Shown here: one piece after another, positions 11,321 to 64,000 of the stretch
Numbering within the stretch: position 1 is the first letter of the stretch
How the letters are laid out: the number at the start of each line of letters is the position of its first letter
Origin: Octopus sinensis
Lineage: Eukaryota
Length of the DNA: 64,000 nt
Reading direction: 5' to 3'
Assembly (NCBI RefSeq): GCF_006345805.1
Contig: NC_043006.1
Span: 93,558,001 to 93,622,000 of the forward strand
Notes under the pieces: generated by a model
Told to the model about the DNA's origin: nothing
Database searches by the model: none
The model's input: only the letters and a program-made list of their open reading frames with translations
Position numbers and translations under genes: made by a program

Positions 11321-12055
11321 GACATACATACATACATATATATATGCGGGATCGAACTCGGAATCTTGGGGTTAGTAGCCCGCACTCTTAACCACTACGC
11401 CATATATTATGGTAAATATTTTAACGAATCGCTCAGTTATGGGAACTTAAACAAACCAACACCTGTCGTAAAGTGTTGGTGTGTGGACGATACACACACA
11501 AACACAAGCATGATACGTTTGTGTGTATGTGTATGTGTGTGTGTGTGTGTACATGCAATCTACACAGCTTTTGGAGACGAGAGAGAGTAGACGATACTCA
11601 ATCAAGAACGTTTATAAAATCAACGCACGTTATACACTTCGTCCCAAATGTGGAATTAGATGGAATCTGAGAATTTCCATAGCATGCCCACCAATATACA
11701 ATTAACGGTTTAGCAACGAAATATGCAGGTGAAGCAATGACGTACGGGGAATTCTGGTGCCACCAAACTTAAGCAATGTATGAAGAGGGTTCATCGGCCT
11801 AAGATGTAATCAGAGCAGTGGAGTAACTTGCACAACGAACTGCGATGTTTAACTATTTTATATTTGTTTTTTATTATACGTTTTCATTTATTCCCTATAA
11901 ATCATTTATGCATTCTGGTTTTTACAATGATGCCATCTTCAGTCTCCAACACGTTCATATTTATATCACTTGTATTTCTCACGCCACAACACTTCTTTGT
12001 AAGTCTCCTCTATGCAGTTTTACGAATTTTAGTGCATTTCTACCAGCTCATGCCT

Positions 12056-25357
<13,302 letters not shown>

Positions 25358-25457
25358 NNNNNNNNNNNNNNNNNNNNNNNNNNNNNNNNNNNNNNNNNNN
25401 NNNNNNNNNNNNNNNNNNNNNNNNNNNNNNNNNNNNNNNNNNNNNNNNNNNNNNNNN
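25358..25457. other. Assembly gap (100 N)
   Basis: N run; a round length suggests a placeholder of unknown true size. Confidence 1.
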
Positions 25458-25960
25458 TTTTCCAATACCCGTTTTTGATAGCTTCGAGCTCTATTTCTGT
25501 GAACTAACGATTTTTTTCTTATTGTTCTAGTTTGATCATATAATATCTGTTCCGTGAGTTGGAACAATCCACTTTCTCTCCATTGATCATACATACGTTG
25601 TCGGTATCCCCTAGTAAGAGCACCATTTTCGTCTACAGGATTGTTCAGGTTGTAACACTCTATGATCACAGCATTGTTTTGTTTGTTCCATCTACGCAGT
25701 GTATGCTGGTCGCTTGCTAGATAACGACAGGCTGGAGTCGGACCAATATCTCTGAGCCTGCCGGGTGTAACACTGTCACCATCAAGGGCTTCAGTTTCAT
25801 TACCACTGTTATTCACAAAATTTCAGGCCTTGTGCCTAAACTAGAAAAGAATGAGCATTCCTGTGCGATAATGACACAAAAGCGGCCTCACACCCTTGGG
25901 TCAGCTTTTATTACTACTAGCGATTAATGAGAGCGCTAGACCTGGCTTTGAAAAAACCAA
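25458..25960 (-). mobile_element. 5' part of an R4/Dong-type RLE non-LTR retrotransposon running into the gap
   Basis: ORF 25331-25816: RRWNKQNNAVIIECY...RGYRQRMYDQW...TEQILYDQTRTIRKK, a typical R4/Dong N-terminal region and similar in pattern to the KWTREDYRDVLKAFY region of the 42960 element. Confidence 0.7.
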
Positions 25961-26003
25961 TTCACCTTGTTCTTATACTAATTACTGATAGAAAAATATA
26001 TTA

Positions 26004-26045
<42 letters not shown>

Positions 26046-26484
26046 TTATATGTATATATATATATATATTTCCCTCGTTGAACTTTTGAATTTCTGAATT
26101 TTTTCTTTGAAATTTTTCTTCTCTTTTTATAAATTTTGTGTGGTTTACAGTTTTTGTAATTGTGCAGTTTGTATGCATTGCCAGGTGCTGACCTCCATAA
26201 TTTTTTTTTCTTTATCGTGCATTTAATTGAGTTGTTACAATAAAAGGCACCTTTAAATATTCGGACAGTTAGTGACAAAAGAAAGATAAAATCTCAACAC
26301 AAAATTGTAGATATTAATGTTTTAAAATTCAATAAAGATGATCTTTTGCTTCTCCGAACAGAAAAAAAAACTGTAGTGTTCTTAGAATAAGAAGGATGCT
26401 TATATTTTCGAATACTCAGGGAGAAAGGAAAGGAAGTGTATTCACAGAAGATGTAGATATTAAAGTTTTTTAAAGCTGATCTTT

Positions 26485-26518
26485 TGTATTATTATTATTA
26501 TCATTATCATCATCATCC

Positions 26519-26593
<75 letters not shown>

Positions 26594-26607
26594 CATTATT
26601 ATCATTA

Positions 26608-26641
<34 letters not shown>

Positions 26642-26770
26642 AATAGTATTATTATCATTATTATTATTGTTGTTATTTTTATTATTATTATCATCATCAT
26701 CATCATTAGTCACAATAGTAGTAGTAGTAGTATAGTAGTAGTAGTAGTAGTAGTAGTAGTGTTATCAGTT
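26485..26770. repeat. (ATT)n/(TAG)n microsatellite just 3' of transporter copy 1
   Basis: Direct reading. Confidence 0.95.
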
Positions 26771-32123: not shown

Positions 32124-32173
<50 letters not shown>

Positions 32174-42397: not shown

Positions 42398-42497
42398 GGG
42401 CATATGGCGTGGTGGTTAAGAGCGCGGGCTACTAACACCAAGATTCCGAGTTCGATTCCAAGTAGTGACCTGAATAATAATATAATAATAATAATAA
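42398..42497 (+). mobile_element. tRNA(Ser)-like head followed by (AAT)n
   Basis: TGGCGTGGTGGTTAAGAGC (A box), GAGTTCGATTCC (B box), GTGACCTG(AAT)n. Confidence 0.75.
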
Positions 42498-45400
42498 ACG
42501 AATTTAATCCAACAACATCGTTACAATGGAAGAAAGGTTCCACAAAATATCTTTTCCAAATTTTCTTTTAAGGCAAAGTAACTAAAAAGTCCGAACTATT
42601 ATTGCCATATATAGTATGGTTTTCTTTCTTTTATGCATAATATTTCCATGTGACATGCATAAGAAATAGAAGCGAACATCAGAGCTCTTGAAAGACAGTA
42701 AGTACATAAATTGATTAATTAATTAATTAATTAAATAAGTATACATGCAACTGTTTGTGCATACACGTACACATTTTAATTATAAAGTATACATGCAACT
42801 GTTTGTGCATACACGTACACATTTTAATTATAAAGTGTACATGCAACTGTTTGTGCATACACGTACACATTTTAATTATAAAGTATACATGCAACTGTTT
42901 GTGCATACACGTACACATTTTAATTATAAAGCATAAATAATGCATACACGCGCTCACACGTGCACACAGAAAGAAAAACCACGTTACGCGGACGAAAACA
43001 AAACAAAAACAAAGCGATTTTTCACGAACAAACGCAAAAAAGAGAAAATTGGTCACTGAATTTAGAAAGTCACTACACAGTTATGCCCGGAAACATGACT
43101 ACCAAAAGAAATAGAGGCGAATTTCGATCTGTAAGTCTTATGCGAGTTCGATATGAACAATATATTAATTCGGAGAATTCAGAAGCGGTGTTTTGTCAAA
43201 AAATTGACCCTGTCACCGTCACAGAAGCGGCGTCTTGTCAAAAAGTTGACTCTGAAAAAATGGACCCCTCTGATGTCGCCGTCAATCATTTAATGAAAAC
43301 AAGCCAAAAATCATGCCGGATCGGTCATCGCCCGGGACAACAAGGACCGCGTTACCCAGTAGGGAACCAGACTGGGGTCGAAAAGTTTGCTGCTGGAACA
43401 AACTCTCAAAAATACGATCTACCAGGTGACCAGAACCAGAATACTTCTAACTCTGGACTTGTAGTGACACCACCAAAAACACCACCTAAAGCAAAACGTA
43501 TAAAATGGACCAGAGAGGACTATAGAGATGTGTTGAAAGCTTTTTATACAGCCCAACTAAACCCAAATAATAACCTCAGTGTACAAACATACATCTCATG
43601 GAGAAATTCAGTAGGCAATGACGTACGTAGATATATAGACGCAAATAAATTAAGTAATGTACGCAGAGATATAATTAAAAACAAAAGACTAACTGACGCT
43701 GAAATTGACAAAATTAGGACACTAATAGCTCATGGTAGACCAAAAGAAAACAGCAACAATGTAGACGAAATAGGTAACAGTAGCACAGAAGCCAGTGTAC
43801 AAGCGGCAAATCAACTTCCCAATGGGGAAGTTAAACAAAGAATAGCGAAGACGAGAGATTTGAAAAAAGAGGAGAACGTAGACCTTCCTCAAGAAAACCA
43901 AAATAGATATGACATAGAATTTGAGGTGAATAATAGAGAAAAGATTATGGAAGCAAAAGTGGACATTATGAGAGAACTCGGCAAGATTGAGCTCACTGAC
44001 ATGGTTAATAGAGAACCACTACCAAAGTTTTCAAATGGCACAAGAAATAACAACACAATCATGACATATAACGTTGCCCTAGGACAGATCTTAAGAAATA
44101 AGGGGAATGATTTGACAACCTTAAATAATCTCATTTATTCCACTGCTAAAGTAGTAACTACCCAACTAGGTATTAAGATGACAAAGAAAAAGGCCAGGCA
44201 TGTCAATGAACCTCCTAAATGGAAAGTAGCGATACAAAAAGAGATTGAATCTCTGCGGGCGGATGTTTCAGTTCTCGATGAGCTTGCTAGAGGAGTGAAT
44301 ATTAAGCCGAGAAAAGCTAGAAAAATCAAGCAAAAATATAAAATCAAAGATCTCATAAACCTCCCTGCAACTAAGGAACTGTTGAAACAACGGATACAGT
44401 TGAAAGCTCAACAGCTTAGAAGGTATGACAAAAGAAACAAATTTTATCGACAGAATAAATTTTTTAAGACAGATGCAAAGAAATTTTATAGGGAAATTGG
44501 CAAAAATAAAATACATATAGAAGATCCACCTAAGATTGAGGAAGTGGAGGAGTTCTGGAAGAAGGTATGGAGCAACGAAAAAGAGTTTAATGCTGAGGCT
44601 GACTGGATAGAATGTGAGAAAGAGAGACTGGATGAACTTGAAGAACAGAAATGGGAAGCAATAAGAATAGAGGAGCTAAGGTGTGTCCTTAGGAAGGCTC
44701 ATAAATGGAAAACCCCAGGACTGGATCGGATCCCTAACTTCTGGCTGAATTGTTTGACAGAGGTACACGAACATCTCGCTGCATCTCTGTCTGATGTCAT
44801 TCAGAACCCAGAGCAAATACCTGCTTGGCTGACTGAAGGAACCACCTACCTATTACCTAAAACCGAAGACACAAAAAACCCAAAGAATTACCGGCCAATA
44901 ACATGTCTCAACACCACCTACAAAATCCTCACATCCATAATAACGGAGAGAATGTACGCTTTCCTTGAACAAAATTCTATCCTTCCACAAGCTCAAAAAG
45001 GTTGTAAAAGAAACTCTTATGGGTGCAAAGACCAATTGCTCATAAACAGAATGATTGTAGAGAATTGCCGGAGCAAAAACAAAAACCTGAGTATGGCATG
45101 GATAGACTACAGGAAAGCGTATGACAGTGTCCCACATAAATGGATACTCAAGGCCCTTGAGATATACAAGATCTCCCCTGTCGTCTCAAAATTCTTAGAG
45201 AATAGCATGACCATGTGGAACACACGTCTCTTTCTAAGCCATAGTAATGGGATGAGCCAGTCCGCATCTTTCAAGGTGACTCCCTCTCTCCATTACTTTT
45301 TTGCATGGCACTGATCCCACTCTCAAACGAATTGGATAGTGCCAGATATGGGTACAAAGTTTTTAGCAAGTTAATAAACCACCTTTTTTATATGGACGAT

Positions 45401-47090
45401 CTAAAGCTGTTTGCCAAGAATGACCAAGAGCTAGAAGGGCTGCTAACAACTGTTAAAGAGTTTAGCAATGATATCGGAATGGATTTTGGCCTTGATAAGT
45501 GTGCTAAAGCAACTTTTGTAAGAGGCAAGCTCAGGCAAACAGCTTCTGTTAAATTAGATATTGACACTACCATCAAGGAACTTGACCCACAAGAAAGCTA
45601 CAAATACCTAGGAATCAACGAAGGAGATGGTATACATCATGCTACTATGAAGGAAAAAATAAGAAAGGAGTACTATAGGAGAATAAGGCTTGTACTGAAG
45701 ACTGAACTCAACTCCAAAAATTGCATTGAGGCCATTAACACCCTGGCACTTCCAGTAGTCCAGTACAGTTTTAACATCATTAACTGGAACCTTACGGAAC
45801 TCCAACGCTTGGACAGGAAGACAAGAAAGTTACTGACATCCAGGAGCATGCACCACCCTAAGGCAGATGTAGACCGCTTGTACCTACCTAGAAGCAGCGG
45901 GGGGAGAGGAATGATGCAATTGGAGCTGTGCTATAAGACCTCTACTGTAGGAATGAACAGGTACCTATCTAGTACAAAAGACTGGATGCTGCGACTTGTG
46001 TGTGAACACGAAAGCAGCAAAAAGCTGCATTCTATTGTCAAGGAAGCTTATAAGTTCGAAAGGGAACTAGGCATTAACCTTGAATCAGGTGAAGAGCCAG
46101 AAACCACTGCTACCAAGCAAGCAAAGCGAATCAGGCAGACTGCAAAAAAGAATGGGCAGAATCAAATTGAGAGGCGGTGGAGCCAGAAGCCCCTGCATGG
46201 ACAATACATTCTCCGAAGCCAAAATGCTGATGTAGACCAAGCAACAACCCATCAGTGGCTGAAGAGTTCTGGATTGAAAGCAGAGACTGAAGGCTTCATA
46301 ATGGCAGCACAAGATCAAAGCTTGTTTACCAGAAATTACCAGGCTAACGTTCTCCGAAACGGTACTGACCCTAAATGCAGATTCTGTGACACATTTGACG
46401 AAACAATAGACCATCTCGTTTCGGGATGTCCTGTGCTGACACCAACGAATACAAAAATCGCCACGATAGGGTAGGACAGTATATACATTGGAAGATATGT
46501 AAACACTACAAATCCGACACTCCTGCTAACTGGTATGAACACCATCCTCAGCCAGTTGTTGAAGGTAAAGATGTCACCATCCTCTGGGATTTTCCAGTCA
46601 ACACTGACAGAACGATCAAGGCTAATCGACCAGACATAATTGTTAAAGACAGGAAGAAAATACCTGCAGACTAATAGAAGTAAGCGTCCCCACTGATAAA
46701 AATGTATCTGTCAAGGAATTTGACAAACTTAGTAAATATAAGGACCTGGAAATCGAAATACAGAGGATGTGGAATCTTAAAACAAAAACTGTTCCTGTTA
46801 TTGTAGGTGCCCTAGGTATGATAAAAAAGGGATGTCAGAAACACCTAGACAATATCCCTGGAAAACCATGTCTCAAGGAAATCCAAAAGATTGTGCTAAC
46901 AAGTACTGCCCACATCCTTAGAAAAACCCTATCAATGTAAATGTTTGTGTTTGTATTACATGGAGATATTTCTCTACTTCCCCTCCCCAAGCTTTCAGCT
47001 ATATTTCAACAACTCTTAACCTTCACTTGCCCTAGGGCGCTGGGTGTGCCCCGGCAGGTGATTGCATCAAACATGCAGATTAAAAGTAAA
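42498..47090 (+). mobile_element. Near-full-length R4/Dong-clade RLE non-LTR retrotransposon flanked by (AAT)n
   Basis: ORFs 42960-45314, 45305-46474 and 46426-46674 plus C-terminus to 46939: RT (NYRPITCL, DYRKAYDSV, IFQGDSLSP, YMDDLKL), CCHC (CRFC...HLVSGC), RHD, NRPDII, VPVIVGALG; frameshifts present. Confidence 0.93.
42737..42930. repeat. 48-bp tandem repeat x4 in the R4 5' region
   Basis: AAGTATACATGCAACTGTTTGTGCATACACGTACACATTTTAATTATA at 42737, 42785, 42833 and 42881; one substitution in total. Confidence 0.95.
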
Positions 47091-47104
47091 TGACAATGAT
47101 AGTG

Positions 47105-47183
<79 letters not shown>

Positions 47184-47197
47184 TGATGATGATGATG

Positions 47198-47266
<69 letters not shown>

Positions 47267-49435: not shown

Positions 49436-50078
49436 GACCGAGATTTTAGAAATATGCTGTGCGTGAGAAGACCCGGCAAGCCAAATGAGGCCATAATCAT
49501 TTGGCCTATGCCAGGGGCGTAACCAGCCCACTTATGCGTACCATTTCCTTCTTAGGACACTAAAACTCTGCTTGCAAAGACCTGTTGAGGCAAGTGAAAT
49601 CAAATCAAATCAAAACTGGCGTCCGTGCTAGCGGAGTGCAAAGAGCACCATACACGTGATCGTTGACAGAGCGGCTGACCGACATCCGTGCCAGTAGCAC
49701 ATAAAAGGCACCATTCAAGTGTGATCGTTACCAGCGTCGCCTAACTGGCACTTGAGCCCCGTACTAGTAGGGTGTTAAGAACACCATCCGAGCGTGATCG
49801 TTGCCAGAACGGCTATCTGGCCTCAGTGCCGGTGGCACGTAAAAGACACCATTCGAGCGTGATCGTTACCAGCATCGCCTTACTGGCATCTGTGCCGGTG
49901 GCATATGTAAAAGATTCGAGCGAGGTTGTTGCCAGTACCGTCTGACTGGCACGTAAAAGCACCCACTACACTCTCAGAGTGGTTGGCGTTAGGAAGGGCA
50001 TCCAGCTGTAGAAACTCTGCCAGATCAAGATTGAAGCCATCTGGTTCGCCAGCCCTCAGTCAAATCGTCCAACCCATG
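49436..50078 (+). mobile_element. Non-coding RTE-related interspersed repeat with five internal 63-73-bp tandem units
   Basis: GTGATCGTT(A/G)CCAG recurs at about 49656, 49721, 49794, 49859 and 49922; contains GGCGTTAGGAAGGGCATCCAGC (RTE-like motif, recalled). Confidence 0.65.
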
Positions 50079-50396
50079 CTACCCGTCTAATAAAGGTAGT
50101 TTAAGGATGATGAACAAAATACCCATACTTCCAGAGGTGAACTATTCAAACCCCAAAGAATCCCTCTAGATGCATGGCTATGATGCTCCCCCACTACTTC
50201 TGCACGTGATCAGAGATGCACATATCGTCAGCCACTAAGAGACATGCTCAACTGGTTAAGGTCAAAGAACTGACAAGCCAATCTGTGGTATTGAGCAGAA
50301 TATTTACTGTAACCCATCTATTATACCAAGACAAAACAATGTACATGATAACACCTCCAATCAGTTAAGATCAATAATACTTCCAATCAGTTAAGA

Positions 50397-50398
<2 letters not shown>
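50079..50398 (-). mobile_element. Dispersed, internally deleted copy of the array unit
   Basis: CTACCCGTCTAATAAAGGTA joined to GTTTAAGGATG...CCAATCAGTTAAGAT, then (ATT)n. Confidence 0.9.
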
Positions 50399-50453
<55 letters not shown>

Positions 50454-50455
50454 CA

Positions 50456-50523
<68 letters not shown>

Positions 50524-50540
50524 TTCATTATTATTATTAC

Positions 50541-51030
50541 CTTTGCCCAGCTTCTAACGCTGGAGATGTACTACGGTGTCGGCTGTTCACTACCAGTGAA
50601 CTAAGGTGACACCTCTTATTTTTCGAGCAGCATCCGGAGTATTCGAGCCGTTCCAAGCAGTGCTGTTTTCTGCAAGTTCTCTGCCCTTATTGCAGCCCCT
50701 ATTTGTTCCATATACTTCTCAAGAATTTCACTCACTGTTCGCGGGACTCCGACAATTATTGGTACTACTACCACCTTTTTCATCGACCACAACTGCTTAA
50801 CTTCCCAAGCCAACCTGTCATATCTATTGACTTTTCTTTCTTCCTTATCGCATGCCTTGTTGTCAGCTGGGCATGCTATATCTATGATCCAGCATAGTTT
50901 GCTTTCTTTCTCAATTAAGACTATGTCTGACTTCCTATTCTCTATCTCATGGTCGCACTGAATCATAAAATAGCACAGGATCATTGCATTATTATTTTCG
51001 ATGATGGCTTCAGGTTTGTGGTCGTACCAT
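50541..51030 (-). mobile_element. 5'-truncated R4-type element flanked by (AAT)n on both sides
   Basis: WYDHKPEAIIEN...RKSDIV...IIDIACPAD...VVVPIIVG...GTARILRMLLEK*; short 3'UTR then (AAT)n. Confidence 0.88.
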
Positions 51031-51056
51031 CATCATCATCATCATAATTATTATTA

Positions 51057-51127
<71 letters not shown>

Positions 51128-51128
<1 letters not shown>

Positions 51129-51636
51129 TTCCATCTTCAAATTTTCTTCCATTTCCCGCCGAGTGTTTTCCGTACACCTAGGGCAGAGAAGCTCACTGTA
51201 TGCATTCTCAGATTACACACGGAAATTCACAGGTAAAATATGTATTTAAAAAAATTATGAATAAATAAATTCATGAATGGATGTTGTTTTCACGGTGATA
51301 ATGCTCTTCTCAGTACACGAGTCGTTCCAGTTAACACGATTTTTTGCACTCCCTGTAGAGATAGTAAGCCTGGTATCATTTTCAAATAGGTTTCAGTACC
51401 TTTTTTTTTTATCATTCCTAGAGCTTCTACAATCACTGGTACTGTAGTCGCCTTGAGATGCCACATTTTTTCAGTTTCTATTAGTAAATCTTTATATTTA
51501 CTGATCTTGTCAAATTCTTTCGCCGCTATATTGTGATCGCAAGGAGTACACATGTCAATTAATAAACACGTCTTTTTTGTCTGATCTTTTATAATAATAT
51601 CCGGTTTATTAGCGTTTATAGTTTTGTCGGTATGTA
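51128..51636 (-). mobile_element. 5'-truncated R4-type element (second family) flanked by (AAT)n
   Basis: CLLIDMCTPCDHNIAAKEFDKISKYKDL...VPVIVEALG...RRALSP*. Confidence 0.88.
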
Positions 51637-51653
51637 CTTATTATTATTATTAC

Positions 51654-51691
<38 letters not shown>

Positions 51692-51723
51692 TATTATTAT
51701 TATTTATTATTATTATTATTATT

Positions 51724-52230
51724 GAGTGAGAGAGTAGTGCATGCCATCAAAGTGACACTGGGGCAAAATATACGAAGCCCAGTATACCCATCATGACTAC
51801 CCGTCTGATAAGGGTGCACCAGGCACATGCATCACAACCATATTTGCGCAACATAGTGATCTCATCTCAAGATAAACAGCGTATAACCTTACAAGTGAGG
51901 CCCAGTTACAATTTTCTTCAGGTCAAGTAGCCCACCTCACTCAAAATGGCCCTGAATAAAGGGTTGTTTAAGGATGTTGAACGAAACACCTATGTTTCCA
52001 AATGTGAATTATTCGAACCCAAAATAATTCCTCTCAACACATGGCTATTATGAGCCCCCACTACTTCTGCTCATGATCAGAGATATACATATCATCAACA
52101 AGGAAATCTTTGGTATTGAGCAGAATATTTACTGTAGCCCATCTTTTATACCAAGACAAAATAATGTAACACTTACAATCAGTTAATATCGAAAGCTATG
52201 TGAGCCACTGTCTGGTAGTACATCAGGCCA
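51724..52230 (-). mobile_element. Dispersed, diverged near-complete copy of the array unit between (ATT)n tracts
   Basis: GAGTGAGAGAGTAGTGCATGCCATCAAAGTGACACTGG...GTACATCAGGCC; many substitutions and a ~45-bp deletion relative to the array units. Confidence 0.92.
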
Positions 52231-52234: not shown

Positions 52235-52346
<112 letters not shown>

Positions 52347-52361
52347 TTATTATTATTATTA

Positions 52362-52405
<44 letters not shown>

Positions 52406-52429
52406 GTAGTAGTAGTAGTAGTAGTAGTA

Positions 52430-55400
52430 TTTTCTCTTTATCAGAGATTTTGTTGAAGCTCCTGGAGTCTTGCATGCGTAGTGATCTTGCTACCTGCAGC
52501 CTACGGTACCACGCTATCCGTTCTTTCTAGCTATCTAATACTTTCCTGATTATTCCTGCCATGCCAAGGAGGCAAATCTTTTGTAACAGTTCTACAGAGC
52601 ACTCTATTCCAATTTTCTTTATATTCCCCTTGATGCCTTCCAATACTGTTTCCAATGACCCAACAGTAATTGACACTATCTTCACCCTCTTCATTTTCCA
52701 TAGCCGGGTTATGTGTTCCCACCAGTTTTTACCATGGGGTAGGTCCAGGTTTTTGCAAATTATCCAGTAAATATACTATGCTACTCTCTCATGCCTACTG
52801 AGATACTCTGCATACGCAACAATACTGCACATGGAGATAACATTATCAATGGTTTCATTTTGTTGTTGACACATATGACATGTTGGACTACTGCCGTTCT
52901 TTAATATGTTGGACTGCTATGATAAACCCTTCTGTTTCTGATTTTAAGCCAGAATCCACTAACCATTGATAGGTAAGGGTTTTGTTAACATCGGCACTAT
53001 TAGATCTCTTTGGGTATTTTCCATCGAGAGGATTTTCTTGTTATTTATCAGGTCATCCCATAAGTTCTGTCCGAATTTTGAATAAAGAAAACAAGTGATC
53101 AAATGCTATATTTAATTGAAATTTAATCATCAATGTACTTTCCCTGATAATCTATGATTTCCTTCCATCTATGTACAAGCTTTTTAATCCCATCAATGTA
53201 AAAGTATTTTGGTTTCAAAGGAAGAACTCTGAAATGTCAGTTTGGACCTCCTCCTGGCTTGCGAAAGTTATGTCCCCCAAATGATTCTGTAAACTACGAA
53301 ACAAATGGTAGTTTGCAGGAGCAAGGTCGGGAGAATAAGGTGGATGAGGAATTTTTCCCAACCAAGCTCTTCGATCTTCTGTGATGTAGTCTTTGCAGTG
53401 TGGGGTCACGCATTATGATGAAACATAACTCCTTTTCACTTCACTAAAGCAGGTCTTTTGTCTTCTTCAAAGCTTGGTTCAAACGCTCTAATTGTTGACA
53501 GTAGACTTGAACATTGATGTTGCATTAGGTGGTAACAATTCAATGTGAAATACTCCTTTGCAATCCCACCAGATAGATAGTAGAAACTTTTTTCCCATGA
53601 AGTTCCCTTCTCGGTTATGGTTGAGCTTTTTCCCCTTTTACCAAGCCACTGTTTACGACGTTTAACATTTCGATAGAAGATCCATTTTTTCGTTACTAGT
53701 CACAAGTCTACACAAAAAAGGTGAAATGAGTTCGCGAGAATGGAGAGAAGAGCAGATGTCAACACGGGGTTTGCGGTTGCTTTCGGACAATTCATGAGGC
53801 ACCCATTTTCAAAACTTAAGAACCTTTCCAAGTTATTGACGATGACGATGAACAGTTGTATGGTTTGAACTAAGCTTTATTACCAATTCTTCAACTGATA
53901 ATGCAGGATTTTCTTCAAGTAATGCCTCAAGGAGCTTATCATCAAACTCAACTGGATGTCCTGTTCGACCTTCATCTTCCACTTTTGAATTTTTCAAACC
54001 ATCTTCTGCAAGTTCTTTCATTCAAGCCTTCTTTCCTATAAGCTGAGTGTATGTTCGGAGTCATTTCGGCAGAAGAGTTTTCTTTTTTGTACTCATAAAG
54101 CCTTATGTCCCTTAAATGCTCTTTGGATACTTCCATGTTAGAAAGGGTTTTAATTCTATTATTCTGTAAAATAATATTTAATTAGTTTAAATGTTCACGA
54201 ATGCATAAAAATAATTTTTAATTCCATTAGACATTCTAAAATATTAAAATTCATTTAATTTTAAAAAAGGTAAAATTGGACAGAACTTATGGGATGACCT
54301 GGTATCAGTAAAACTATCTAAGGCAGGAGTTTTCATACGCTTAGCTTTTTCTGTGCTCGATCCCAGTACGTTTAATTCTGGAATTTGTGGTATTTGGAAT
54401 TCATTTGTGGTATTTGGAATTCATTTGCCTGTTTTGTTACTTGGTGTGATGCTTTCTTGTTTTCATGCTTTGAGACAAGTTTTAACATCCATCTATTAAA
54501 AAACTATAGGTATAATCCGTCAGGACAGATGTTAGCGTTGTATGCATAGTTGTTAAACAGGTTATGGGTCTATAGTTTTTTGGTTCATTTGTTTCTTCAT
54601 TGTTTGAAGTAGGAATGTTACACCATTAACTAGCCAAGAGGGAATCATATTAGTTTGTTGCAAAACATCGTTGTAAAGTTTTATTAGCAGTTCATGTCTC
54701 TCTGGGAAGGCATTCATTGAGAAGATAGGAATTTTATCATTTCCTTAAGACTTCTATTTGCATGACTGCTTGTGAGAGCAGATCTTACCTCCTCTACCTT
54801 GATACCCTCCCACTTTTGCTCTTCTAAGGAGTTTAATCTGTAGATATTCTATCGATCCAAGGGACCTTTTCATTCTGTGTTTTTTCTTCTGCCCAAATTT
54901 TATTTTAAAATTCTTGCACTTCTTTTGACGGGAGTAACTTTACTGTCACTGGTATTTTCCCTATCTTCCTGAAAAAATTTTCAGGTTATTTTTGAACATG
55001 TTGTCCTTGAAGAATCTAACGCGCTTTTCATACCATGCTATGCGGGCAGCTTTAGCACATACCTTCGGAGTTTTGTTGGTTTGATAGTCTTGTCAAACTT
55101 AAAGTTTTTAAACATACTATGTCAGACCTAAGTAGCTGAATTTGGTGTTGAATACTCTCTTGCCAAGAAGGCTTTTTTGCGATAATGTTTTCATTTTCTA
55201 ATATTTTCACCACATAGAATCGTGAAGTGGTTGACATCTGTAATGTTAAGATCATTAGTTGAAATTATATCCTTAAGTGCAAGGTGGATTTTACAAATTA
55301 TTTTCAGGTTTTGGTTAGAACTGCGAATTTTTGGGAGAGTGTCACATCCATTCATACTGGTTTCTTTAATTTTCAGCCATTCAATCATAATTTGATTATT

Positions 55401-56275
55401 TAGATCATGTAGTTCCGTTGGGTTAATATTTGTGTGACTTTCTTCATCTATTTGATTTCCATCTGCCTTAGTGTTTATGATTGGTTCAGAGAGTATTTCA
55501 CTTTGCCTTATCAGTTACATTAACTCTTTCAATCAACATTGCACTTTCATCAGGTCAGTGTTGCTTTACAATTATTTCTTCTGTATAATCTTCTTTAGCT
55601 GCAACTTCGTTCCTCTTATCCCTTACTGACTGTTTAATTTGGTCAATCTCTAATTCAGTCAGTAATTTCTTTTTCATGTTTCTTCTGACGTTGGCAAGTT
55701 TGTTACTGTCTATGCAGGGTCTTACTTCAAAGTGTTTCTGTCTCCAGCTTAAGTAGGTTTGAATAGTATTAGATTTATTTATGGGGAAATATATGGCATG
55801 ATAGAATGCCTTAAGAACTTCTTTATTATCTACCCTACATTTTCATTCTTTCTCTTTTTTGTTATTTGCTGAAGAGAATGGATGGGTATATGCTGGAATA
55901 TTCTGGTTGTCGGGTACTTCCAGCTCCTGTGTTTCGGGAAGATTTGAACCTGTGGTTGATTATTCGTATAGAATCTGGTTCATCATTCGACTACGCAGTC
56001 CTTGGTGTTCCGTGTGAGTACAATTCCGGTTTGTAATTTGCTTTATTATCGAGGCATGACGAGCTTCGGCGTTGACATTAGAGAACGGATCTGTCTGTTT
56101 AGGGTTAATTTTTTTGAGACAACACCGCCTCCGAGTTCTCTGCATCTAAACATTGTTTGTAAGGTAGCTTCTTAACGCTAACAGATCTGTATTCGTCAGT
56201 ATTTTTTTGTTGTTGGTACATTTATCTCCAGGCAGAGTTTTTTGTGGTATTTTAAAACTGTGGTGTAGCGCATTA
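52430..56275 (-). mobile_element. Old, internally deleted R4-type element interrupted by a mariner
   Basis: N-terminal KEVLKAFYHAIF...DSNKLANVRRN (~55700-55850); SGLKSETEGFIIA and CHMC...RHERV (52750-53040); C-terminal LGMAGIIRKVLDS*; (AAT)n at both ends. Confidence 0.82.
53048..54302 (-). mobile_element. Full-length-sized (1255 bp) degenerate mariner with TA TSD
   Basis: ~31-bp TIRs (T/C)CAGGTCATCCCATAAGTTCTGTCC(G/A)A(A)TTTT; TA at 53046-53047 and 54303-54304; PHPPYSPDLAPANYHLFRSL. Confidence 0.92.
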
Positions 56276-56386
<111 letters not shown>

Positions 56387-56818
56387 CATTATTATTATTA
56401 TTATTATTATCATCATCATCATCATCATCATCACTATTATTATTATCATTATTATTAGGCAACGAACGCGATGGACGAAACGCTTACCGGTATTTTGAAC
56501 GTCGCTATGTTCTAATTCCGAATTCCGCCGAAGATGACTTTACTATTCATCCTTTCGGAGTTTATTAAATAAGTACCAGTTACGCACTGGAGTCATTGTA
56601 ATCGACTTAATCCCTCCCCTACCCCACCAAGCTGCCCATGTGATAAAAATTTGAAATCATTGTTATTTGTTTGATTGTGTAGCAAATGATCGTATGTAAA
56701 TGATTTACAAACATGATTTTCAAGTGTGAAGCTTCCAGGATCATATTCTGGAAGGAAATAACAAAGTTCTTTTTATATGATTTTGAAATATCGTTCTTTG
56801 GAATTTGGCCATTCTTCA

Positions 56819-56979
56819 TCATTTATTCTCGACATTATTCACAGAATATGTGAGTGTTTGCCTAGTTAGTAGTTTGCTAAATAAGAATGGAATTAAAATG
56901 GGTTGAACCGAAAGAATTGGTCCGATCCCGATCACATAGTAGCTGTATTCGTAAGTGTTCATGTATTCTGAGAAGATTC
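56819..56979 (-). CDS. SLC16/MCT-like transporter copy 2, last coding exon
   Basis: Same 161-nt length and acceptor as copy 1; ends NNVENK*. Confidence 0.85.
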
Positions 56980-57084
56980 CTGCAAACAACAAGAACAAGA
57001 AGAGCAACATTAAAGACGAGTCACCAGATTTGAATATTCAATAAATAAATAAATCAAATTTATTTCTAATCATTAATATCTATG

Positions 57085-57480
57085 GTAAGGCGTCAAGCGA
57101 GCAGAATCGTGGACGTGCCGGAAAAAATACTTGGTGGCATTTCGTTCGTCTTTACAGTCTGTGTTCACCTAAAACCGAGGTCGATTTTGCCTTTCATCCT
57201 TTCGGAGTCGATTAAATAAGTACCAGTTACACACTGGGGTCGATGTAATCGACTTAATCCGTTTGTCTGACCTTGTTTGTCCCCCTCTGTGTTTATCCCC
57301 TTGTGGGTAGTAAAGAAATAGGTATTTCGTCTGTCTTTATGTTCTGAGTTCAAATTCTGCTGAAGTTGACTTTGCCTTTTATCATTTCGGGGTCGATAAA
57401 CTAAGTACCAGTTGCGTACTGGGGTCGATCTAATCGACTGACCCCTTCCCCCAAAATGTTGGGCCTTATGCCTAGAGTAG
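57085..57480 (+). mobile_element. SINE with internally repeated core
   Basis: GCCTTT(C/T)ATC(C/A)TTTCGG.GTCGAT..A.TAAGTACCAGTT occurs twice (57190 and 57372). Confidence 0.7.
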
Positions 57481-58149
57481 AAAAGAATTGCAATCCACCA
57501 TTGAACGGGATTCCGCACAGTTCTATCTATCTAATTCCACACACGATCCTTGGTCGACTGGAGGCTTCAGTAAAAAGAAGGCCTGAAATACTATGCAATA
57601 GGCTTGGTTTGAACTCGAGATCTTGTAATTATAGAGCAAACTTCATTGCTATACTATGAAAGACGACATGAAATTGTCTGAACGTAAAAGAAAAATTGCC
57701 CCCATGCTACAGCGTGTGCTAAAACACGAGATCTTGTGATTATAAAGCAAAATTCTGAGCCATTCAGTCATACTATGCAGGAATGAAAAATATCTTTATC
57801 TCCATGGAAACTGGAAAAATCTCTTGTAGAATATATATTCTCATAAATCGCTAGAGTTAAGTCATAAGAATTGTGAAGATATGACCGGTTTGTAGGTTTT
57901 TACACTGATTAACGAAAAACGTTTATCTACAAAAACGTTATTTCTTATATTTCATTCGATTCAAATGTTTCTCCATAAAATACTATAATTGCTGACCGGG
58001 GATTACTTCAGCAACATTCATACGGGAATGAGACGTTTTGGCACAGCCGTTTTAGCACCACCTATTTGGCATCGCTAATTCGATGCTGACTTATTTGACA
58101 ACCAACGTGTAAACGTTTCTATCGTTCTCTTCCTCTCTGTCTGTCTGTC

Positions 58150-58196
<47 letters not shown>

Positions 58197-58654
58197 ATTT
58201 ATCTGCGTAATTATACTTCTCCTTCTGTATATAAGGAGAGGGGAAACATTTATGACAACTGTGCTGAATTGATAAATTGTAATCTCTCTTCCTTTCTTTC
58301 TCTCCTTCTCTTCCTCTGTTTATTTGTGGGTTCTTCTAGTTACGCTTCTAGTTATGCTTTTAGTCAGGCTTCTATATCTAATATCTGTCTCTCCTTCCCT
58401 CTCTCTCTCTCTCCTTTACTCCCCCCTCTCTTTCTCTTTCTGCAGGTATACATTTCTTTGTGAGCACGCGTGTTAACATCCAGAATAGAAAAGTGCTGCT
58501 GCGCAAAAACGCTGAATATCTAGCCAACGACAAAACTGCTGCGACCGATCGTCTCATTCTTCCTTAACACATACTTCATATGTATATATGTAATCAGAAC
58601 GGTTGTAACTGAGTATATTCTGAAATATGGATAATAAAAATGTTACATATTTAC

Positions 58655-59758
58655 CTATCAGATATCCAATAATTAAAATGCCAGTTCCAATTGCTGTTTC
58701 TCCAAATCCCATGCTTATCGAAAAATATCCGATTTCGAAGTAATCCATAATAGTTACAACATATGTAGAGAATATGAGGCCATTTGTGAACATCACAGCA
58801 AATGTTAGCAAAGTCAAATATGTTGAAGTGGACAACGAAGGATAAACACAGATCAGTAATCCGCTCATGGTGGCTGCAGTACTAAATATAATCCTACTTG
58901 GAACAATGTTTTTATGTATCAACCAACTACTGACGAAACAAGCCAAGATATACCCAAACGATCCCACTGAAAATATACGGGCACTTTCTGCTTGACTTAG
59001 CCCTTGTTGTACGCAATAATCCGGTAAGATAGACACTGTTGTTATAACACTGCCATACGTTATAATAACAGCGAAAAGGAATAAAAGGTAATTGAAATTT
59101 GTTAAAATTGTAACGATTTTTGCAGAAAATTTCGAATCAGATTTTCCTTCCGTTTGAACCTTGGCACTTCGAACATCAATCACCTCGTCTTCCGATTTTA
59201 TAGAATTTATAGCTGTCTCTTCAATACCCAAAGAATCTTCTTTGTCAGGTTGTGTATTATTTATAACAAATGGTTCGTTGTCATATTTTAAGGCCTTAAT
59301 AACCGCCTCACGAATATATTTTTCATTTGTATTGATGTCTTCGTTATGATTCAAGGCTGTATTATTCACTTCAGATATTTCCAGTTTGCTCGATATCGTT
59401 TCATCCTGAACGTCACCAACATTTTGAAATTGTTCTACAGAAACGTTTGAATCCGACTTATACAAATCTTTCGGCGCGTTACTTTCACTTACTGCCAAAG
59501 TTTCTCTCCGCGTGTTTTTATACATATCCGTAGAATATATGAGAGCACATGGCAGAGTTTGTATGAAAGTAGCAGCCAGGAGAAGAAGACTTCCACGCCA
59601 GAACATGAGTTCAATGAAATAATTGGTAAGGATTGGGAAAATTATATATCCAAGAGATTTTCCGACCGTAGCAAATGCAATAAATTTACGACTGTCTTCA
59701 CCGAAATAAGCTGCTAATCCATTATTAGCCGAGACATTAAGAGAAGCACAACCAATTC
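58655..59758 (-). CDS. SLC16/MCT-like transporter copy 2, 1104-bp exon
   Basis: gtaacag|GA...ATA G|gtaaat; open frame GIGCASLNVSANNGLAAYFGEDSRKFIAFATVGKSLGYIIFP... Confidence 0.9.
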
Positions 59759-60965
59759 CTGTTACAAGAGATGAAAAATAAAAAACAAAGAGTAATTAAA
59801 AAGTAGTTACTAAATTAATCAAGGACATTTCTGAATAATTAACGAAGAGAGTGTTGTTATTTTATTATTTCTGTTTTAATTCCCTGATTGGAAGCTTTAC
59901 ATCCATATTAAAAGGTAGCTCATAACGTTTACACTAGAATTAAACATCGTTTCGTATTCAATTTGCAAGATTCTTGATGTGAATTCGTGTATTGAAATAA
60001 ATCTTAAGTCTTGGTTCTGGGGATGAAGTAAGATATTCTCATGCCGCACACTTGGATTGGATTCTTGCAAACAAAGTGAACACCACCAAAAGCATCCAAT
60101 ATACCACATGGTGATCAGCGCTCGATTATGATCGACAGAAGGCTTCAGTACTTATGAGATTTTGCTGCCCTAATATATGTGTGTGTGTGGGTGTGTGTGT
60201 GTGTGTGTGAAATTTGAAATATAAACAATAAGAAACCATAAAATTAATTTTTATGTTTCAAAATGAAACAAAACAAACAGTTAGATCAAAAATAATGTTT
60301 CTTTTTTATACTAACACTTTATTTACATTTGAAATGTTTTCTTCTACTTATTTTTTTAATTGCAAAATCTTTGATCTGAGCCACAAAAATTAATCTTACG
60401 TAAGACATCTGCTTCAATATTTAGTAGAGATAAATCATCCTGAATATTATGTTAGCAAGTTTAAAGTGATTTCTATTGTACCGTAAACTATTTACCATTT
60501 CTATGGTGACCTCCCTTGATAAAATAAGCAAGTGCTTATCCTACTTAATGGTTAATCCAGTTCTGATGGTGATGGTAAACCAGTGAACAAAATTAGCTTA
60601 TCACCCAATTAAGTCAGTGCGATTTGAACTCAAACTACAAAGAGCTGGAATAAATACCATTAGAGATTCTGTCAGACACTCTTGCACTTCCACCTCTCCA
60701 CTATTCTGGACAAAGTACTTATGGAGATGTTGACCACGTCAATGACTTCAGCCTGGTCAAATTATAAAGACTTCTCTTTTCCTCGAAGCCCATAAAGATA
60801 AAGTAAAAAGATTTATGATTTGCGTTCTTTCGATAATAAAGTTTCAGAAAGCGATAAGTGACATTTGAATTCATTATCATATCTATGATTAGCGTTAAAC
60901 GTTTTACAATATGCATAGAAAGCAAGAAAACACACACACACATGTATATGAAAATACACACACAT

Positions 60966-61765: not shown

Positions 61766-61813
61766 ACAATATATGTTTCAACGCAAGATTTCACATCAAG
61801 AATCTTGCAAAAC

Positions 61814-61858
<45 letters not shown>

Positions 61859-61981: not shown

Positions 61982-62032
<51 letters not shown>

Positions 62033-62589: not shown

Positions 62590-62711
62590 ATGCATGTATG
62601 TCATTATTCAGTTTATTTCAAGATTTCTTGCCAGTAGAGAAAGAACCTGTTTCTAACCTAGATCCAAGGTTCCTTCATTGGAATTTCAACATCAACAAGA
62701 GGGCATTTTTG

Positions 62712-62742
<31 letters not shown>

Positions 62743-64000
62743 GTATGTATTTATGTGTGTACGTGCAGACTTGTATGTTTTATATTTGTATTCTCATGCA
62801 TATATTTGCATATCTAATCATGCTCATATATATTTAAATGATACACTTCTGGAAAGTTTTACAGATTTTTACAGTTCCAGTGATGGATTGGATCTGTATT
62901 TTACAAATTAACGCTTTCTCCTTTCTCGTTTCGGAAAGCCTAATTTTTCAAGATTGGCATTTAGGCAGTATGTTACATATCCCAGGGCCCCAATAATTAC
63001 AGGTATAAACCTGAACTTGTAATTTGCGCAGAGTAACTGCAGATTTCTCAATAGTTCAGCGTAGGCATTTTCTTTTTCACTGATCTTCAGCTTTATGTTA
63101 ACATCCACTGGGCAGCTAATTTCCACAACTGTACACAGTTTCTGTTCTCTATCCCAAATCACTATATCCGGTCTGTCGTGCTTTTTCATCGAGGTCTTTA
63201 CTGGTACATTCCACCAGTATTCCTTTTCTTTATGAGTGGCTATGGCTTCTACCATGTTGTGGGTTTATATTTCTTTCTCCTCGGGATTACACTTCCGACG
63301 GATTTCGTTATTGATTGTCCTAGCTACAACATTATGTCTTATCAGTTGAGGATATCGGGATGACATTTTTGGACAACTGTTTATGATGTAGGTGATATCT
63401 TCAGTGTGAACTCCGCAAAGTCTGCATCAGTTTTTACATTTTACGGCTTTTCCTGCATCTCTATCCCTTTTGAGCATCTGGTACTTCGTTGATATTTCCT
63501 GTTCCTGGATTGCAAGCGCATACCCTTCAAAGTGGGAGGTAGTAATTTGGCTATTGGTACATGATAAACTGCTTTGATAATCGATGTTGCTATCATCACG
63601 GAGCTTTCTACTAACATATCCATGCATAGTCTTCTGCTCATATACGCTCATCCTTTCATCTGATGATACGTTGCGGTAGAGTCGTGCGACTTCTTTGGGC
63701 ATGTATTTAAGGTTATCAGACAAGCAATGTTGCTCAAGGAGCTGCCTTCCAAGTCTTGTGATGTTATCATCTTCAGGTATGCAAACTTGATCAAGGGATG
63801 CACTTCGACACTTGGTGGTCAAAAATGTGGCCAAAGGGATATGATACGACATTCAAAGGAATGTTGGATCGATGTGAAGCCTCTGCCGCCTTGATTTCGT
63901 TTTAGGTAGAGGCGGTCTACGTTACTGTTTATGTGGAAATTTTGTGTGCTTGTAAGTATTTTCCGGGTTTTCACATCAATGGCTCGGATCTCGTCAAGCG
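62590..64000 (-). mobile_element. R4-like RLE element, 3' part (continues beyond the window), ending in (CATA)n
   Basis: DVKTRKILT...VDRLYLKRNQGGRG; EGYALAIQEQ; HDRPDIVIWD...VEISCP; IPVIIGALG; frameshifts and stops. Confidence 0.85.

What the first reader, a model, noticed from the sequence alone, without database searches (positions are those of the whole stretch)
50079..52230. The array unit behaves like a non-autonomous, (AAT)n-targeted partner of R4/Dong retrotransposons
At all three loci the unit has (AAT)n in the same polarity as R4 tails. At two loci it lies directly 3' of a co-oriented R4 element: after 52430-56275 and after 50541-51030. At the array it lies beyond the gap that follows the R4 5' end at 25458-25960. 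Dong-type R4 elements are known to target TAA repeats, and strand-fixed insertion is expected from target-primed reverse transcription. The minus-strand start AAATGCCCTG also echoes a TGCCCT motif in three R4 3'UTRs here (47028, ~51180, ~62700). Inference: a microsatellite-homing SINE-like element, or a detached long R4 3'UTR, that seeded a satellite.
Basis: partly seen in the sequence, partly recalled or inferred. Interest (0 to 1): 0.8.

Follow-up and report, generated by a model that had tools for sequence, protein, structure and literature searches.

The report
TAA-tailed octopus repeat forming a satellite
A 560-base non-coding octopus repeat always sits in (TAA)n microsatellites in one orientation, next to TAA-targeting LINE retrotransposons; it is probably a small hitch-hiking retroposon that was then copied into a tandem array, which is a modest addition to known transposon biology.

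Summary
The observation mostly holds. The window is octopus DNA. A ~559-bp non-coding unit occurs as a 17-unit array (12055-25357) and as two separate copies (50080-50397, 51724-52230). All copies lie on the minus strand, with (TAA)n in the same polarity as the tails of the neighbouring LINEs.

Those LINEs have a reverse transcriptase (RT), a CCHC motif and a restriction-like endonuclease (RLE), so they belong to the R2 group. Even the doubtful "R4 5' end" at 25458-25960 proved to be the N-terminal domain of such a LINE.

A solitary full-length copy in Octopus bimaculoides has the same two ends, (AAT)3 on its 5' side and (TAA)11 on its 3' side. The unit is therefore a dispersed element found in TAA repeats.

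The rest is not supported. The TGCCCT "echo" is chance. The unit shares no 3' sequence with any local LINE. It has no tRNA head, no ribozyme, no terminal inverted repeats and no Helitron ends.

The array grew at least partly by DNA-level block duplication, shown by shared spacer quirks and by nearest neighbours lying within three units (p=0.00015).

Best reading (about 0.55): a non-autonomous retroposon that borrows Dong-like machinery and was then amplified by unequal crossing-over. The partnership is circumstantial: I found only five loci and no empty site.

The parts
12055..25357 (-). Array: 16 full units of ~555-561 bp, one unit cut by the gap (25026-25357) and one internally deleted unit (22302-22441), separated by (TTA)n spacers of 56-517 bp (up to 805 bp around the deleted unit). 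Some spacers carry (TCA)n or (TTC)n blocks.
14049..14609 (-). Reference unit U03. Its sense strand reads ATGCCCTGATGCAG...CTCTCTCACTCAA and is followed by (TAA)n.
25358..25457 (.). Assembly gap of 100 N that hides the junction between the upstream LINE and the array.
25458..26486 (-). LINE F, 5' part. The N-terminal-domain ORF is at 25460-25822. The 5'UTR probably runs up to the (TAA)n junction at 26486; this boundary is inferred.
26487..26760 (-). (TAA)n-(TGA)n-(CTA)n tract upstream of LINE F, at the edge of a segmental duplication.
42499..47104 (+). LINE A, the only one on the plus strand. ORFs at 42960-45314 and 45305-46474 hold RT and CCHC; the RLE follows after frameshifts to ~46940. (AAT)n lies at its 5' side (42472-42498). 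The 5' boundary is inferred.
47105..47264 (+). (TAA)n tail of LINE A, with an internal (TGA)6 block.
50080..50397 (-). Partial unit. It is 5'-truncated by ~48 nt at the (TAA)n junction and has a 26-bp duplication and an internal deletion of ~140 bp. The last ~75 nt are lost at a junction with a truncated plus-strand SINE.
50398..50540 (-). (TAA)n between LINE E and the partial unit.
50541..51030 (-). LINE E: a 5'-truncated LINE holding an RLE-domain ORF (50616-51029) and a 75-nt 3'UTR.
51031..51128 (-). (TAA)n plus (ATG)n between LINE C and LINE E.
51129..51637 (-). LINE C: a 5'-truncated LINE 3' end. It is 67% identical in nucleotides to LINE A 46603-46900 and 53% in amino acids over the RLE domain.
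51638..51723 (-). (TAA)n tail of the solitary unit.
51724..52230 (-). Solitary diverged unit (79.5% identity to the reference unit U03, 42-bp internal deletion). It has the same 5' and 3' ends as the array units.
52235..52429 (-). (CTA)8(TAA)n tail of LINE B, which is also the 5' flank of the solitary unit.
52430..56275 (-). LINE B: a degenerate, full-length-sized RLE LINE with no ORF of 110 aa or more. It shows colinear tblastn matches to LINE A ORFs and RLE.
56279..56457 (-). (TAA)n with a (TGA)8 block, at the 5' flank of LINE B.
62710..64000 (-). LINE D: the 3' part of another RLE LINE. It has a (TACA)n tail at 62710-62761, not (TAA)n. It is not part of the TAA system and is listed because the finding cites it.

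Best explanation
The unit is a ~559-bp non-coding, non-autonomous retroposon whose RNA sense is the window's minus strand and which ends in a (UAA)n tail.

Inferred mechanism:
1. A Dong-like LINE protein (RT + CCHC + restriction-like endonuclease) nicks (TAA)n/(TTA)n microsatellites.
2. The nicked (TTA)n strand anneals to the (UAA)n tail of the RNA and primes reverse transcription.
3. Every insertion therefore lands in a TAA repeat in one orientation and brings a new TAA repeat with it.
4. That new repeat is itself a target. As a result, units and LINE fragments pile up co-oriented in one tract (50-56 kb), and a second unit can land behind a first.
5. Once two or more units were in tandem, unequal crossing-over or replication slippage between units or spacers amplified [unit + spacer] blocks into the 13-kb array.

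Shown: discrete ends, dispersal, TAA flanks on both sides, fixed polarity, one 5'-truncated copy, LINE identity and co-orientation, and block duplication within the array.

Inferred: RNA-mediated movement, use of the LINE protein, and seeding of the array by re-insertion.
For: - The two ends are the same in the array, in the 79.5%-identical copy at 51724-52230 and in a solitary O. bimaculoides copy at L001:70547-71093.
- The solitary copy has (AAT)3 directly 5' and (TAA)11 directly 3'. A second O. bimaculoides locus (P0001) has (ATT)8 at the same end. So TAA is present on both sides, and the long tract lies 3' in the minus sense.
- Copy 50080-50397 is 5'-truncated exactly at a (TAA)n junction.
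- There is no ORF.
- Five RLE LINE copies with (TAA)n tails lie in the window. LINE B and LINE A have TAA on both flanks, and four of the five are co-oriented with the units.
- The upstream neighbour of the array is also a co-oriented RLE LINE.
- Dong elements target TAA repeats in Bombyx, Anopheles and the snail Biomphalaria (PMC3812793). Dong-R4 LINEs are abundant and recently active in octopus (PMC13282606).
- The 3'-terminal ~125 nt are 2-3 times more conserved than the rest among three diverged copies (6.6% against 18.5% divergence, p=0.0009; the window was chosen post hoc).
- Block duplication in the array: spacers 8 and 10 share (TTC)n; spacers 9, 11, 13 and 16 share CATTTAA(TAT)n; spacers 1, 3 and 5 share (TCA)n. 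Units 8 and 10 differ by 5 substitutions. The nearest neighbour lies within 3 units for 14 of 16 units (p=0.00015).
Against: - The unit's last 180 nt show no sequence similarity to the 3' ends of LINE A-E. The LINEs are also unlike each other, apart from A and C.
- No pol III head, Rfam family or tRNA was found. No HDV-like fold of the kind Dong carries at its 5' end (PMC3774820) was found by my own descriptor, but I had no positive control.
- The sense strand carries T4-T7 runs, so how the unit is transcribed is unknown.
- Only five loci are known. Three lie within 40 kb of each other, and two were found through the unit itself.
- No empty orthologous site could be obtained.
- No target-site duplication can be read in a microsatellite.
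- All 16 complete array units are full length, and the array growth that can be demonstrated is at the DNA level.
- The O. bimaculoides copy has no RLE LINE within 86 kb.
- With three sequences there is no covariation support for an RNA structure.
Confidence: 0.55

Rival explanations
1. The unit is a satellite that spreads purely at the DNA level. The monomer is [unit + (TAA)n]. Arrays grow and shrink by unequal crossing-over. Solitary copies are collapsed arrays, or pieces moved by segmental duplication, by extrachromosomal circles, or by recombination between TAA tracts. Fixed polarity then follows simply from the monomer structure. The nearby LINEs are there only because they target the same TAA tracts.
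For: Block duplication inside the array is demonstrated. All complete array units are full length. The window carries a ~6-kb segmental duplication that ends next to TAA tracts. No promoter, ribozyme or LINE-like 3' end was found in the unit.
Against: The solitary O. bimaculoides copy sits in a gene intron with exact unit ends, only (AAT)3 on one side and (TAA)11 on the other. That asymmetry fits a 3' tail better than an excised monomer. Copy 50080-50397 is truncated at the sense 5' end. The copies differ by 10-20% and are dispersed. The 3' end is preferentially conserved.
Confidence: 0.2
2. The unit is a piece of an unidentified autonomous LINE. It is either that LINE's long 3'UTR or an internally deleted derivative that keeps the parent's 5' and 3' ends, like the R2 SIDE elements.
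For: It has a (TAA)n tail like the LINEs. The 3' 125 nt are conserved. The gap at 25358-25457 hides what joins LINE F to the array.
Against: The 5' end is identical at three independent loci, unlike randomly 5'-truncated LINE tails. There is no similarity to any part of LINE A-F in the window. The unit has no coding remnant. A six-frame search found only two octopus artefact proteins.
Confidence: 0.1
3. The unit is a non-autonomous retroelement mobilised by other machinery. Candidates are a Penelope-like element (these show microsatellite insertion bias and head-to-tail multicopy insertions) or an APE-type LINE that makes TAA tails.
For: Penelope-like elements are abundant in octopus. They insert into microsatellites, and their non-autonomous relatives form head-to-tail copies (PMC8557442). 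The unit has no 3' similarity to the local RLE LINEs.
Against: The reported Penelope-like biases are for (TA)n, (CA)n and (C)n, not (TAA)n. There is no hammerhead or other ribozyme hit. Units are separated by long TAA spacers rather than forming pseudo-LTRs or inverted copies. The LINEs interleaved with the units are RLE-type with TAA on both flanks.
Confidence: 0.1
4. The unit is a DNA transposon of the MITE, Helitron or Helentron type that carries or targets a microsatellite.
For: Microsatellite-associated dispersed repeats in insects and bivalves have turned out to be Helentron derivatives (PMC4067079, listed). A hairpin, TGCCCTG...CAGGCA, lies at one end of the unit.
Against: There are no terminal inverted repeats. 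There is no 5'-TC or 3'-CTRR end in either orientation (read directly). The flanks are TAA repeats rather than AT or TT sites. The polarity matches that of the LINE tails.
Confidence: 0.03

Closest known systems
Dong (Bombyx mori), DongAg and DongBg: R4-clade LINEs specific for (TAA)n
   Same: They insert into TAA microsatellites in a fixed orientation. The neighbouring LINEs here share the RT + CCHC + RLE architecture and have TAA repeats on both flanks. DongBg shows that the type exists in molluscs (PMC3812793).
   Different: The unit itself encodes nothing and shares no sequence with the local LINEs. Clade membership of those LINEs was not tested by phylogeny. No 5' HDV-like ribozyme of the kind shown for Dong (PMC3774820) was detected.
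R2 SIDEs (short internally deleted, non-autonomous R2 derivatives; from my own knowledge of Eickbush-lab work)
   Same: Non-coding parasites of a site-specific RLE LINE that insert at the same target in the same orientation.
   Different: SIDEs keep the parent's 5' ribozyme and 3'UTR. The unit shows neither a ribozyme nor any similarity to a LINE end in the window.
LINE-dependent SINEs recognised through tail repeats (for example the eel UnaSINE/UnaL2 pair, or L1/Alu through poly(A); from my own knowledge)
   Same: A short non-coding element that ends in the same simple-repeat tail as the LINE.
   Different: Classical SINEs have a pol III head derived from tRNA, 5S or 7SL, and stringent pairs share the 3' stem-loop. 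Both features were tested here and not found.
Satellites derived from transposable elements (reviewed in PMC6947457)
   Same: The same sequence exists both as a dispersed element and as a tandem array with signs of local, higher-order duplication.
   Different: Here the monomers are separated by long, variable microsatellite spacers that are also the presumed insertion target.
Non-autonomous Penelope-like elements and retrozymes
   Same: Non-coding retroelements that form head-to-tail multicopy insertions with a microsatellite bias (PMC8557442).
   Different: No hammerhead motif and no pseudo-LTR or inverted structure is present, and the microsatellite is TAA rather than TA or CA.

Membership tests
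R2-group (RLE-encoding) LINE, for the neighbouring elements | A single polyprotein with reverse transcriptase, followed by a CCHC motif and a C-terminal restriction-like endonuclease (PD..D/E..K); no APE domain | tested here: met
   RVT_1 and zf-RVT in LINE A. CRFC...H...C, then RPDI...D...K, in the downstream frames. The RLE domains of LINE E, C, B and D match each other. The closest solved structures are R2 proteins.
R4/Dong clade, for the neighbouring elements | Placement of the RT inside the R4 clade rather than HERO, NeSL, R2 or CRE | not tested
   No reference R4, Dong or HERO sequences were available for a tree. Homologues carry no clade names. HERO also contains microsatellite-specific families (PMC4640811). 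Octopus annotations report many Dong-R4 and few Hero copies, which is a prior, not a test.
R4/Dong clade, for the neighbouring elements | Dong-type target: (TAA)n on both sides of the element, in a fixed orientation | tested here: met
   LINE B has (TAA)n at 56279-56457 and 52235-52429. LINE A has (AAT)n at 42472-42498 and (TAA)n at 47105-47264. LINE C and LINE E have TAA tails. LINE D does not; it has a (TACA)n tail.
Non-autonomous partner of a LINE (stringent type) | The 3' end of the short element is homologous to the 3' end of the LINE | tested here: not met
   The best match between the unit's 3' 180 nt and five LINE 3' ends is 10 nt, E=0.16. Only LINEs in this window were tested.
Non-autonomous partner of a LINE (relaxed, tail-only type) | Same simple-repeat tail, same target and orientation as the LINE; 5' truncations; no coding capacity | tested here: met
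   The TAA tail and polarity hold at five loci. One copy is 5'-truncated. There is no ORF. The sample is small.
Non-autonomous partner of a LINE | Demonstrated mobility: empty orthologous or polymorphic sites, or trans-mobilisation | tested here: inconclusive
   The O. sinensis and O. vulgaris PP2A B55 loci were too long to fetch. A more distant cephalopod lacks the unit, but the intron cannot be aligned.
Classical SINE | Head derived from tRNA, 5S, 7SL or snRNA with an internal pol III promoter, and no internal terminator | tested here: not met
   No tRNA found by ARAGORN. No Rfam hit at gathering score or at E<=5 apart from noise. The sense strand has T4-T7 runs.
SIDE-like deletion derivative of a Dong-type LINE | An HDV-like self-cleaving ribozyme at the 5' end, plus the parent's 3'UTR | tested here: inconclusive
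   Neither Rfam nor my own nested double-pseudoknot descriptor gave a hit. The descriptor also found nothing in LINE A or B, so it has no positive control. There is no match to a parent 3'UTR.
Helitron / Helentron / MITE | 5'-TC and 3'-CTRR ends with a subterminal hairpin, or terminal inverted repeats | tested here: not met
   The ends are ATGCCCTG... and ...CACTCAA. No TIR is present and no CTRR end in either orientation.
Retrozyme / Penelope-like non-autonomous element | Hammerhead ribozyme motif; pseudo-LTR or inverted partial copies | tested here: not met
   No hammerhead hit. The units are strictly direct repeats separated by microsatellite.
Satellite DNA | Head-to-tail array with evidence of amplification by local duplication | tested here: met
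   17 units. The nearest neighbour lies within 3 units for 14 of 16 (p=0.00015). Spacer idiosyncrasies are shared. With only one 13-kb array seen, it is array-forming rather than a major satellite.

The most novel reading that the evidence does not exclude
The unit is mobilised by Dong-like LINE proteins purely through its (UAA)n tail. It needs no LINE-derived 3' structure, no pol III head and no ribozyme. Because each insertion lays down a fresh copy of its own target, it acts as a self-targeting generator of satellites. The first tandem copies could even arise in a single event, if the RT jumps from the 5' end of one unit RNA to the tail of another.
Probability: 0.2. Interest if true: 0.6.

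Novelty: new member of a known kind. Interest (0 to 1): 0.35.

Why it matters
If the partnership is real, this would be a documented non-autonomous parasite of a microsatellite-specific RLE LINE. It would also give a concrete path from retroposon to tandem array: an element that carries its own target in its tail nests behind itself, and recombination does the rest. That would help explain why TAA tracts in octopus genomes are crowded with co-oriented repeats, and why such regions assemble poorly. It would also supply a simple RNA substrate for studying how R2-group enzymes choose templates. If it is not real, the locus is an ordinary TE-rich microsatellite region with a local tandem duplication.

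Tried and rejected
- TGCCCT motif link: rejected as chance.
- 3'-end homology between the unit and LINE A-E: none.
- tRNA or Rfam head, hammerhead or HDV ribozymes: none. My own HDV-like descriptor found nothing in the unit or in LINE 5' ends, but it has no positive control.
- RNA structure: the whole unit folds only slightly better than shuffles (z=-1.97). Three diverged copies give one compensatory pair, which is uninformative.
- Coding origin: no ORF. The six-frame search found only two O. bimaculoides gene-model artefacts.
- More genomic copies: the metagenome scan for a conserved 23-mer gave 0 hits. P0001 and the window's MFS ORFs are not on record.
- Empty-site test at the PP2A B55 intron: the O. 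sinensis and O. vulgaris gene ranges exceed 100 kb, so no DNA was returned. Isoform P0247 is not on record. The locus fetched from GCA_054771915.1 is too diverged to align outside exons.
- Idea that the array and the unit at 51.7 kb are paralogous through the segmental duplication: rejected. The duplication (26776-32662 against 56740-62337) stops short of both.
- Mantel test of sequence distance against position: weak (r=0.17, p=0.064). The nearest-neighbour statistic is the informative one.
- Direct comparison of the 25458-25960 ORF with LINE A: no significant match. The link needed the intermediate P0353.
Full report
**What is there.** The window is cephalopod DNA. Translated pieces of the repeat hit only Octopus bimaculoides proteins, and a solitary copy was recovered from O. 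bimaculoides chromosome CM046622.1. Between 12055 and 25357 lie 16 full units of ~555-561 bp. There is also one unit cut by a 100-N gap and one internally deleted unit. The units are separated by (TTA)n spacers of 56-517 bp. Read on the minus strand, each unit starts with ATGCCCTGATGCAG, ends with CTCTCTCACTCAA and is followed by (TAA)n.

Two more copies lie inside the finding's coordinates. The copy at 51724-52230 is 79.5% identical and has the same two ends, with TAA on both sides. The copy at 50080-50397 is 92% identical. It is truncated by ~48 nt at its sense 5' end, exactly at a (TAA)n junction. It has an internal deletion and has lost its last ~75 nt at a junction with a truncated plus-strand SINE.

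**The neighbours are RLE LINEs.** LINE A (plus strand, ~42499-47104) has RVT_1 and zf-RVT domains. These are followed, after frameshifts, by a CCHC motif and an RPD...D...K restriction-like endonuclease. It ends in (TAA)53 and begins right after a short (AAT)n.

On the minus strand there are four further copies:
- LINE B (52430-56275) is degenerate but colinear with LINE A, with TAA repeats on both flanks.
- LINE C (51129-51637) is 67% identical in nucleotides to the 3' part of LINE A.
- LINE E (50541-51030) is an RLE ORF plus 3'UTR.
- LINE D (62762-64000) has a tail of (TACA)n, not TAA.

Its 121-aa ORF has 209 homologues. One of them, the 1122-aa P0353, carries this domain at its N-terminus. 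P0353 also has RVT_1 and zf-RVT, an RT/CCHC region 39% identical to LINE A (E=4e-84) and an RLE domain 41% identical to LINE E (E=5e-25). So a co-oriented RLE LINE does lie upstream of the array, across the gap. The closest solved structures are R2 proteins. I did not test whether these LINEs belong to R4/Dong rather than HERO. The literature reports abundant, recently active Dong-R4 LINEs in octopus (PMC13282606, PMC8967140) and TAA-specific Dong elements in insects and a snail (PMC3812793).

**What does not hold.** TGCCCT occurs 35 times in the window. Fourteen hits are inside array units, and the remaining 21 equal the chance expectation of 20.8. The hit near 62700 lies beyond LINE D's tail, and the hits at 47028 and 51180 are a single homologous site in related LINEs. 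The last 180 nt of the unit share nothing with the 3' ends of LINE A-E; the best match is 10 nt with E=0.16. The unit has no tRNA-like head and no Rfam match. I detected no HDV-like fold (without a positive control). It has no ORF, no terminal inverted repeats and no Helitron ends. Its sense strand carries T4-T7 runs, so it is not a classical pol III SINE.

**Evidence that it is a mobile, TAA-associated element.** The O. bimaculoides copy (L001:70547-71093, 89.6% identical to the array consensus) sits in an intron of the PP2A B55 gene, about 40 bp upstream of an exon. It has exactly the same two ends, (AAT)3 directly 5' and (TAA)11 directly 3'. A second O. bimaculoides locus (P0001) shows the unit's 5' end abutting (ATT)8, followed by unrelated sequence.

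Five loci therefore show the same polarity. TAA is present on the 5' side even at solitary copies, which a randomly inserting element would not show. The long tract lies on the sense 3' side, as expected for a tail. One copy is 5'-truncated. Among three diverged copies, the 3' ~125 nt are two to three times more conserved than the rest (the window was chosen post hoc). This fits a constraint on the end used to start reverse transcription. No RLE LINE lies within the 86 kb around the O. bimaculoides copy. Adjacency to a LINE is therefore not obligatory, which is what independent insertion into a shared target predicts.

**How the array grew.** The units differ by 0.9-6% in substitutions, with a mean of 3.4%. 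For 14 of 16 units the most similar unit lies within three positions (permutation p=0.00015). Reciprocal pairs are U02/U03, U04/U06, U08/U10 and U12/U15. Spacers carry shared quirks that independent tails would not reproduce: (TTC)n at the start of spacers 8 and 10, CATTTAA(TAT)n and ATG(TTA)7A(TAT)3 in spacers 9 and 11, and (TCA)n blocks in spacers 1, 3 and 5. At least part of the array therefore arose by duplication of [unit + spacer] blocks at the DNA level. Whether the first tandem pair came from re-insertion into a tail cannot be decided from this window.

**Verdict.** The most likely reading (about 0.55) is a non-autonomous retroposon that uses the TAA-specific machinery of Dong-like LINEs, recognised perhaps only through its (UAA)n tail, and that was later amplified by unequal crossing-over. 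The main rival (about 0.2) is a [unit + TAA] satellite that spreads only at the DNA level. Lesser rivals are a fragment of an unidentified LINE, another retroelement's passenger, and a DNA transposon. The link to R4/Dong is circumstantial: it rests on shared target, shared polarity and interleaving, with no sequence or experimental tie.

I could not obtain an empty orthologous site. The sister-species loci were too long to fetch, and a more distant species could not be aligned. I also could not obtain a genome-wide census. This is a new family of a known general kind, of moderate interest to transposon specialists.

Noticed in passing
window 26776-32662 and 56740-62337: Segmental duplication, 89-93% identical. 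Each copy carries a ~347-350-aa MFS_1-like ORF (29569-30612 and 58554-59606, minus strand). In both copies the duplication edge lies next to a TAA-type tract that has been colonised by a different RLE LINE (F and B).
   Followed up: partly
window 45305-46474 (LINE A ORF B): This octopus LINE protein is 60-75% identical to predicted proteins from a hydrozoan (Clytia), corals and anemones, a shrimp (Penaeus) and a killifish (Nothobranchius). That is unusually high cross-phylum similarity for a LINE and may hint at horizontal transfer.
   Followed up: no
window 62710-62940: LINE D, a related RLE LINE, ends in (TACA)n instead of (TAA)n. This suggests sister families with different microsatellite tails or targets in the same genome.
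   Followed up: no
window 47183-47200, 56400-56440, 51031-51046, and array spacers at 12140-12205, 13920-14000, 15425-15503: (TGA)n/(TCA)n blocks are embedded in the (TAA)n tracts, both in LINE tails and flanks and in array spacers. (CTA)n blocks directly follow LINE B (52404-52429) and precede LINE F's tract (26716-26760).
   Followed up: no
window 42402-42498; also 11348-11405 and 10726-10789 (minus strand): Pieces of a tRNA-like repeat (GGTTAAGAGCGCGGGCTACTAAC...GAGTTCGATTCC). Two of the three copies (42402-42498 and 10726-10789) end in CCTGAATAA followed by (TAA)n or (CAA)n; the third (11348-11405) breaks off after GTTCGATCC. The one at 42472-42498 provides the TAA tract in front of LINE A. 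This may be a true pol III SINE with a TAA-type tail.
   Followed up: partly
L001:70960-71150 (O. bimaculoides PP2A B55 alpha gene model, P0002): The gene model includes the unit's 3' end and its (TAA)n, read as ...CTALSLNNNNNNNNNNNDNND, as coding sequence just upstream of a conserved exon. Orthologues lack it, so it is probably an annotation artefact or an exonisation.
   Followed up: partly
window 49700-50079 and L001:71540-71790: An abundant octopus SINE that ends in ...CCCATGCTAGCATGGAAAGCGGACGTTAAACG(ATG)n. The window copy is truncated and joined to the partial unit through a 3-nt CTA microhomology.
   Followed up: partly
window 42727-42935: A 48-bp tandem repeat of 4.3 copies, 96% matching, inside what is probably the 5'UTR of LINE A.
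   Followed up: no
window 27141-27289, 57100-57256, 56473-56620, 2845-2962: Another short dispersed repeat family. The copy at 56473-56620 is cut off exactly where the (TAA)n tract upstream of LINE B begins.
   Followed up: partly
window 7874-10642: A GC-rich segment (55% GC) with an Exo_endo_phos ORF. This is an APE-type LINE unrelated to the RLE LINEs.
   Followed up: no
window 12260-25357: Array units differ by many single-base indels (0-11 indel columns per unit). These could be long-read assembly errors, so I used substitution-only distances.
   Followed up: partly
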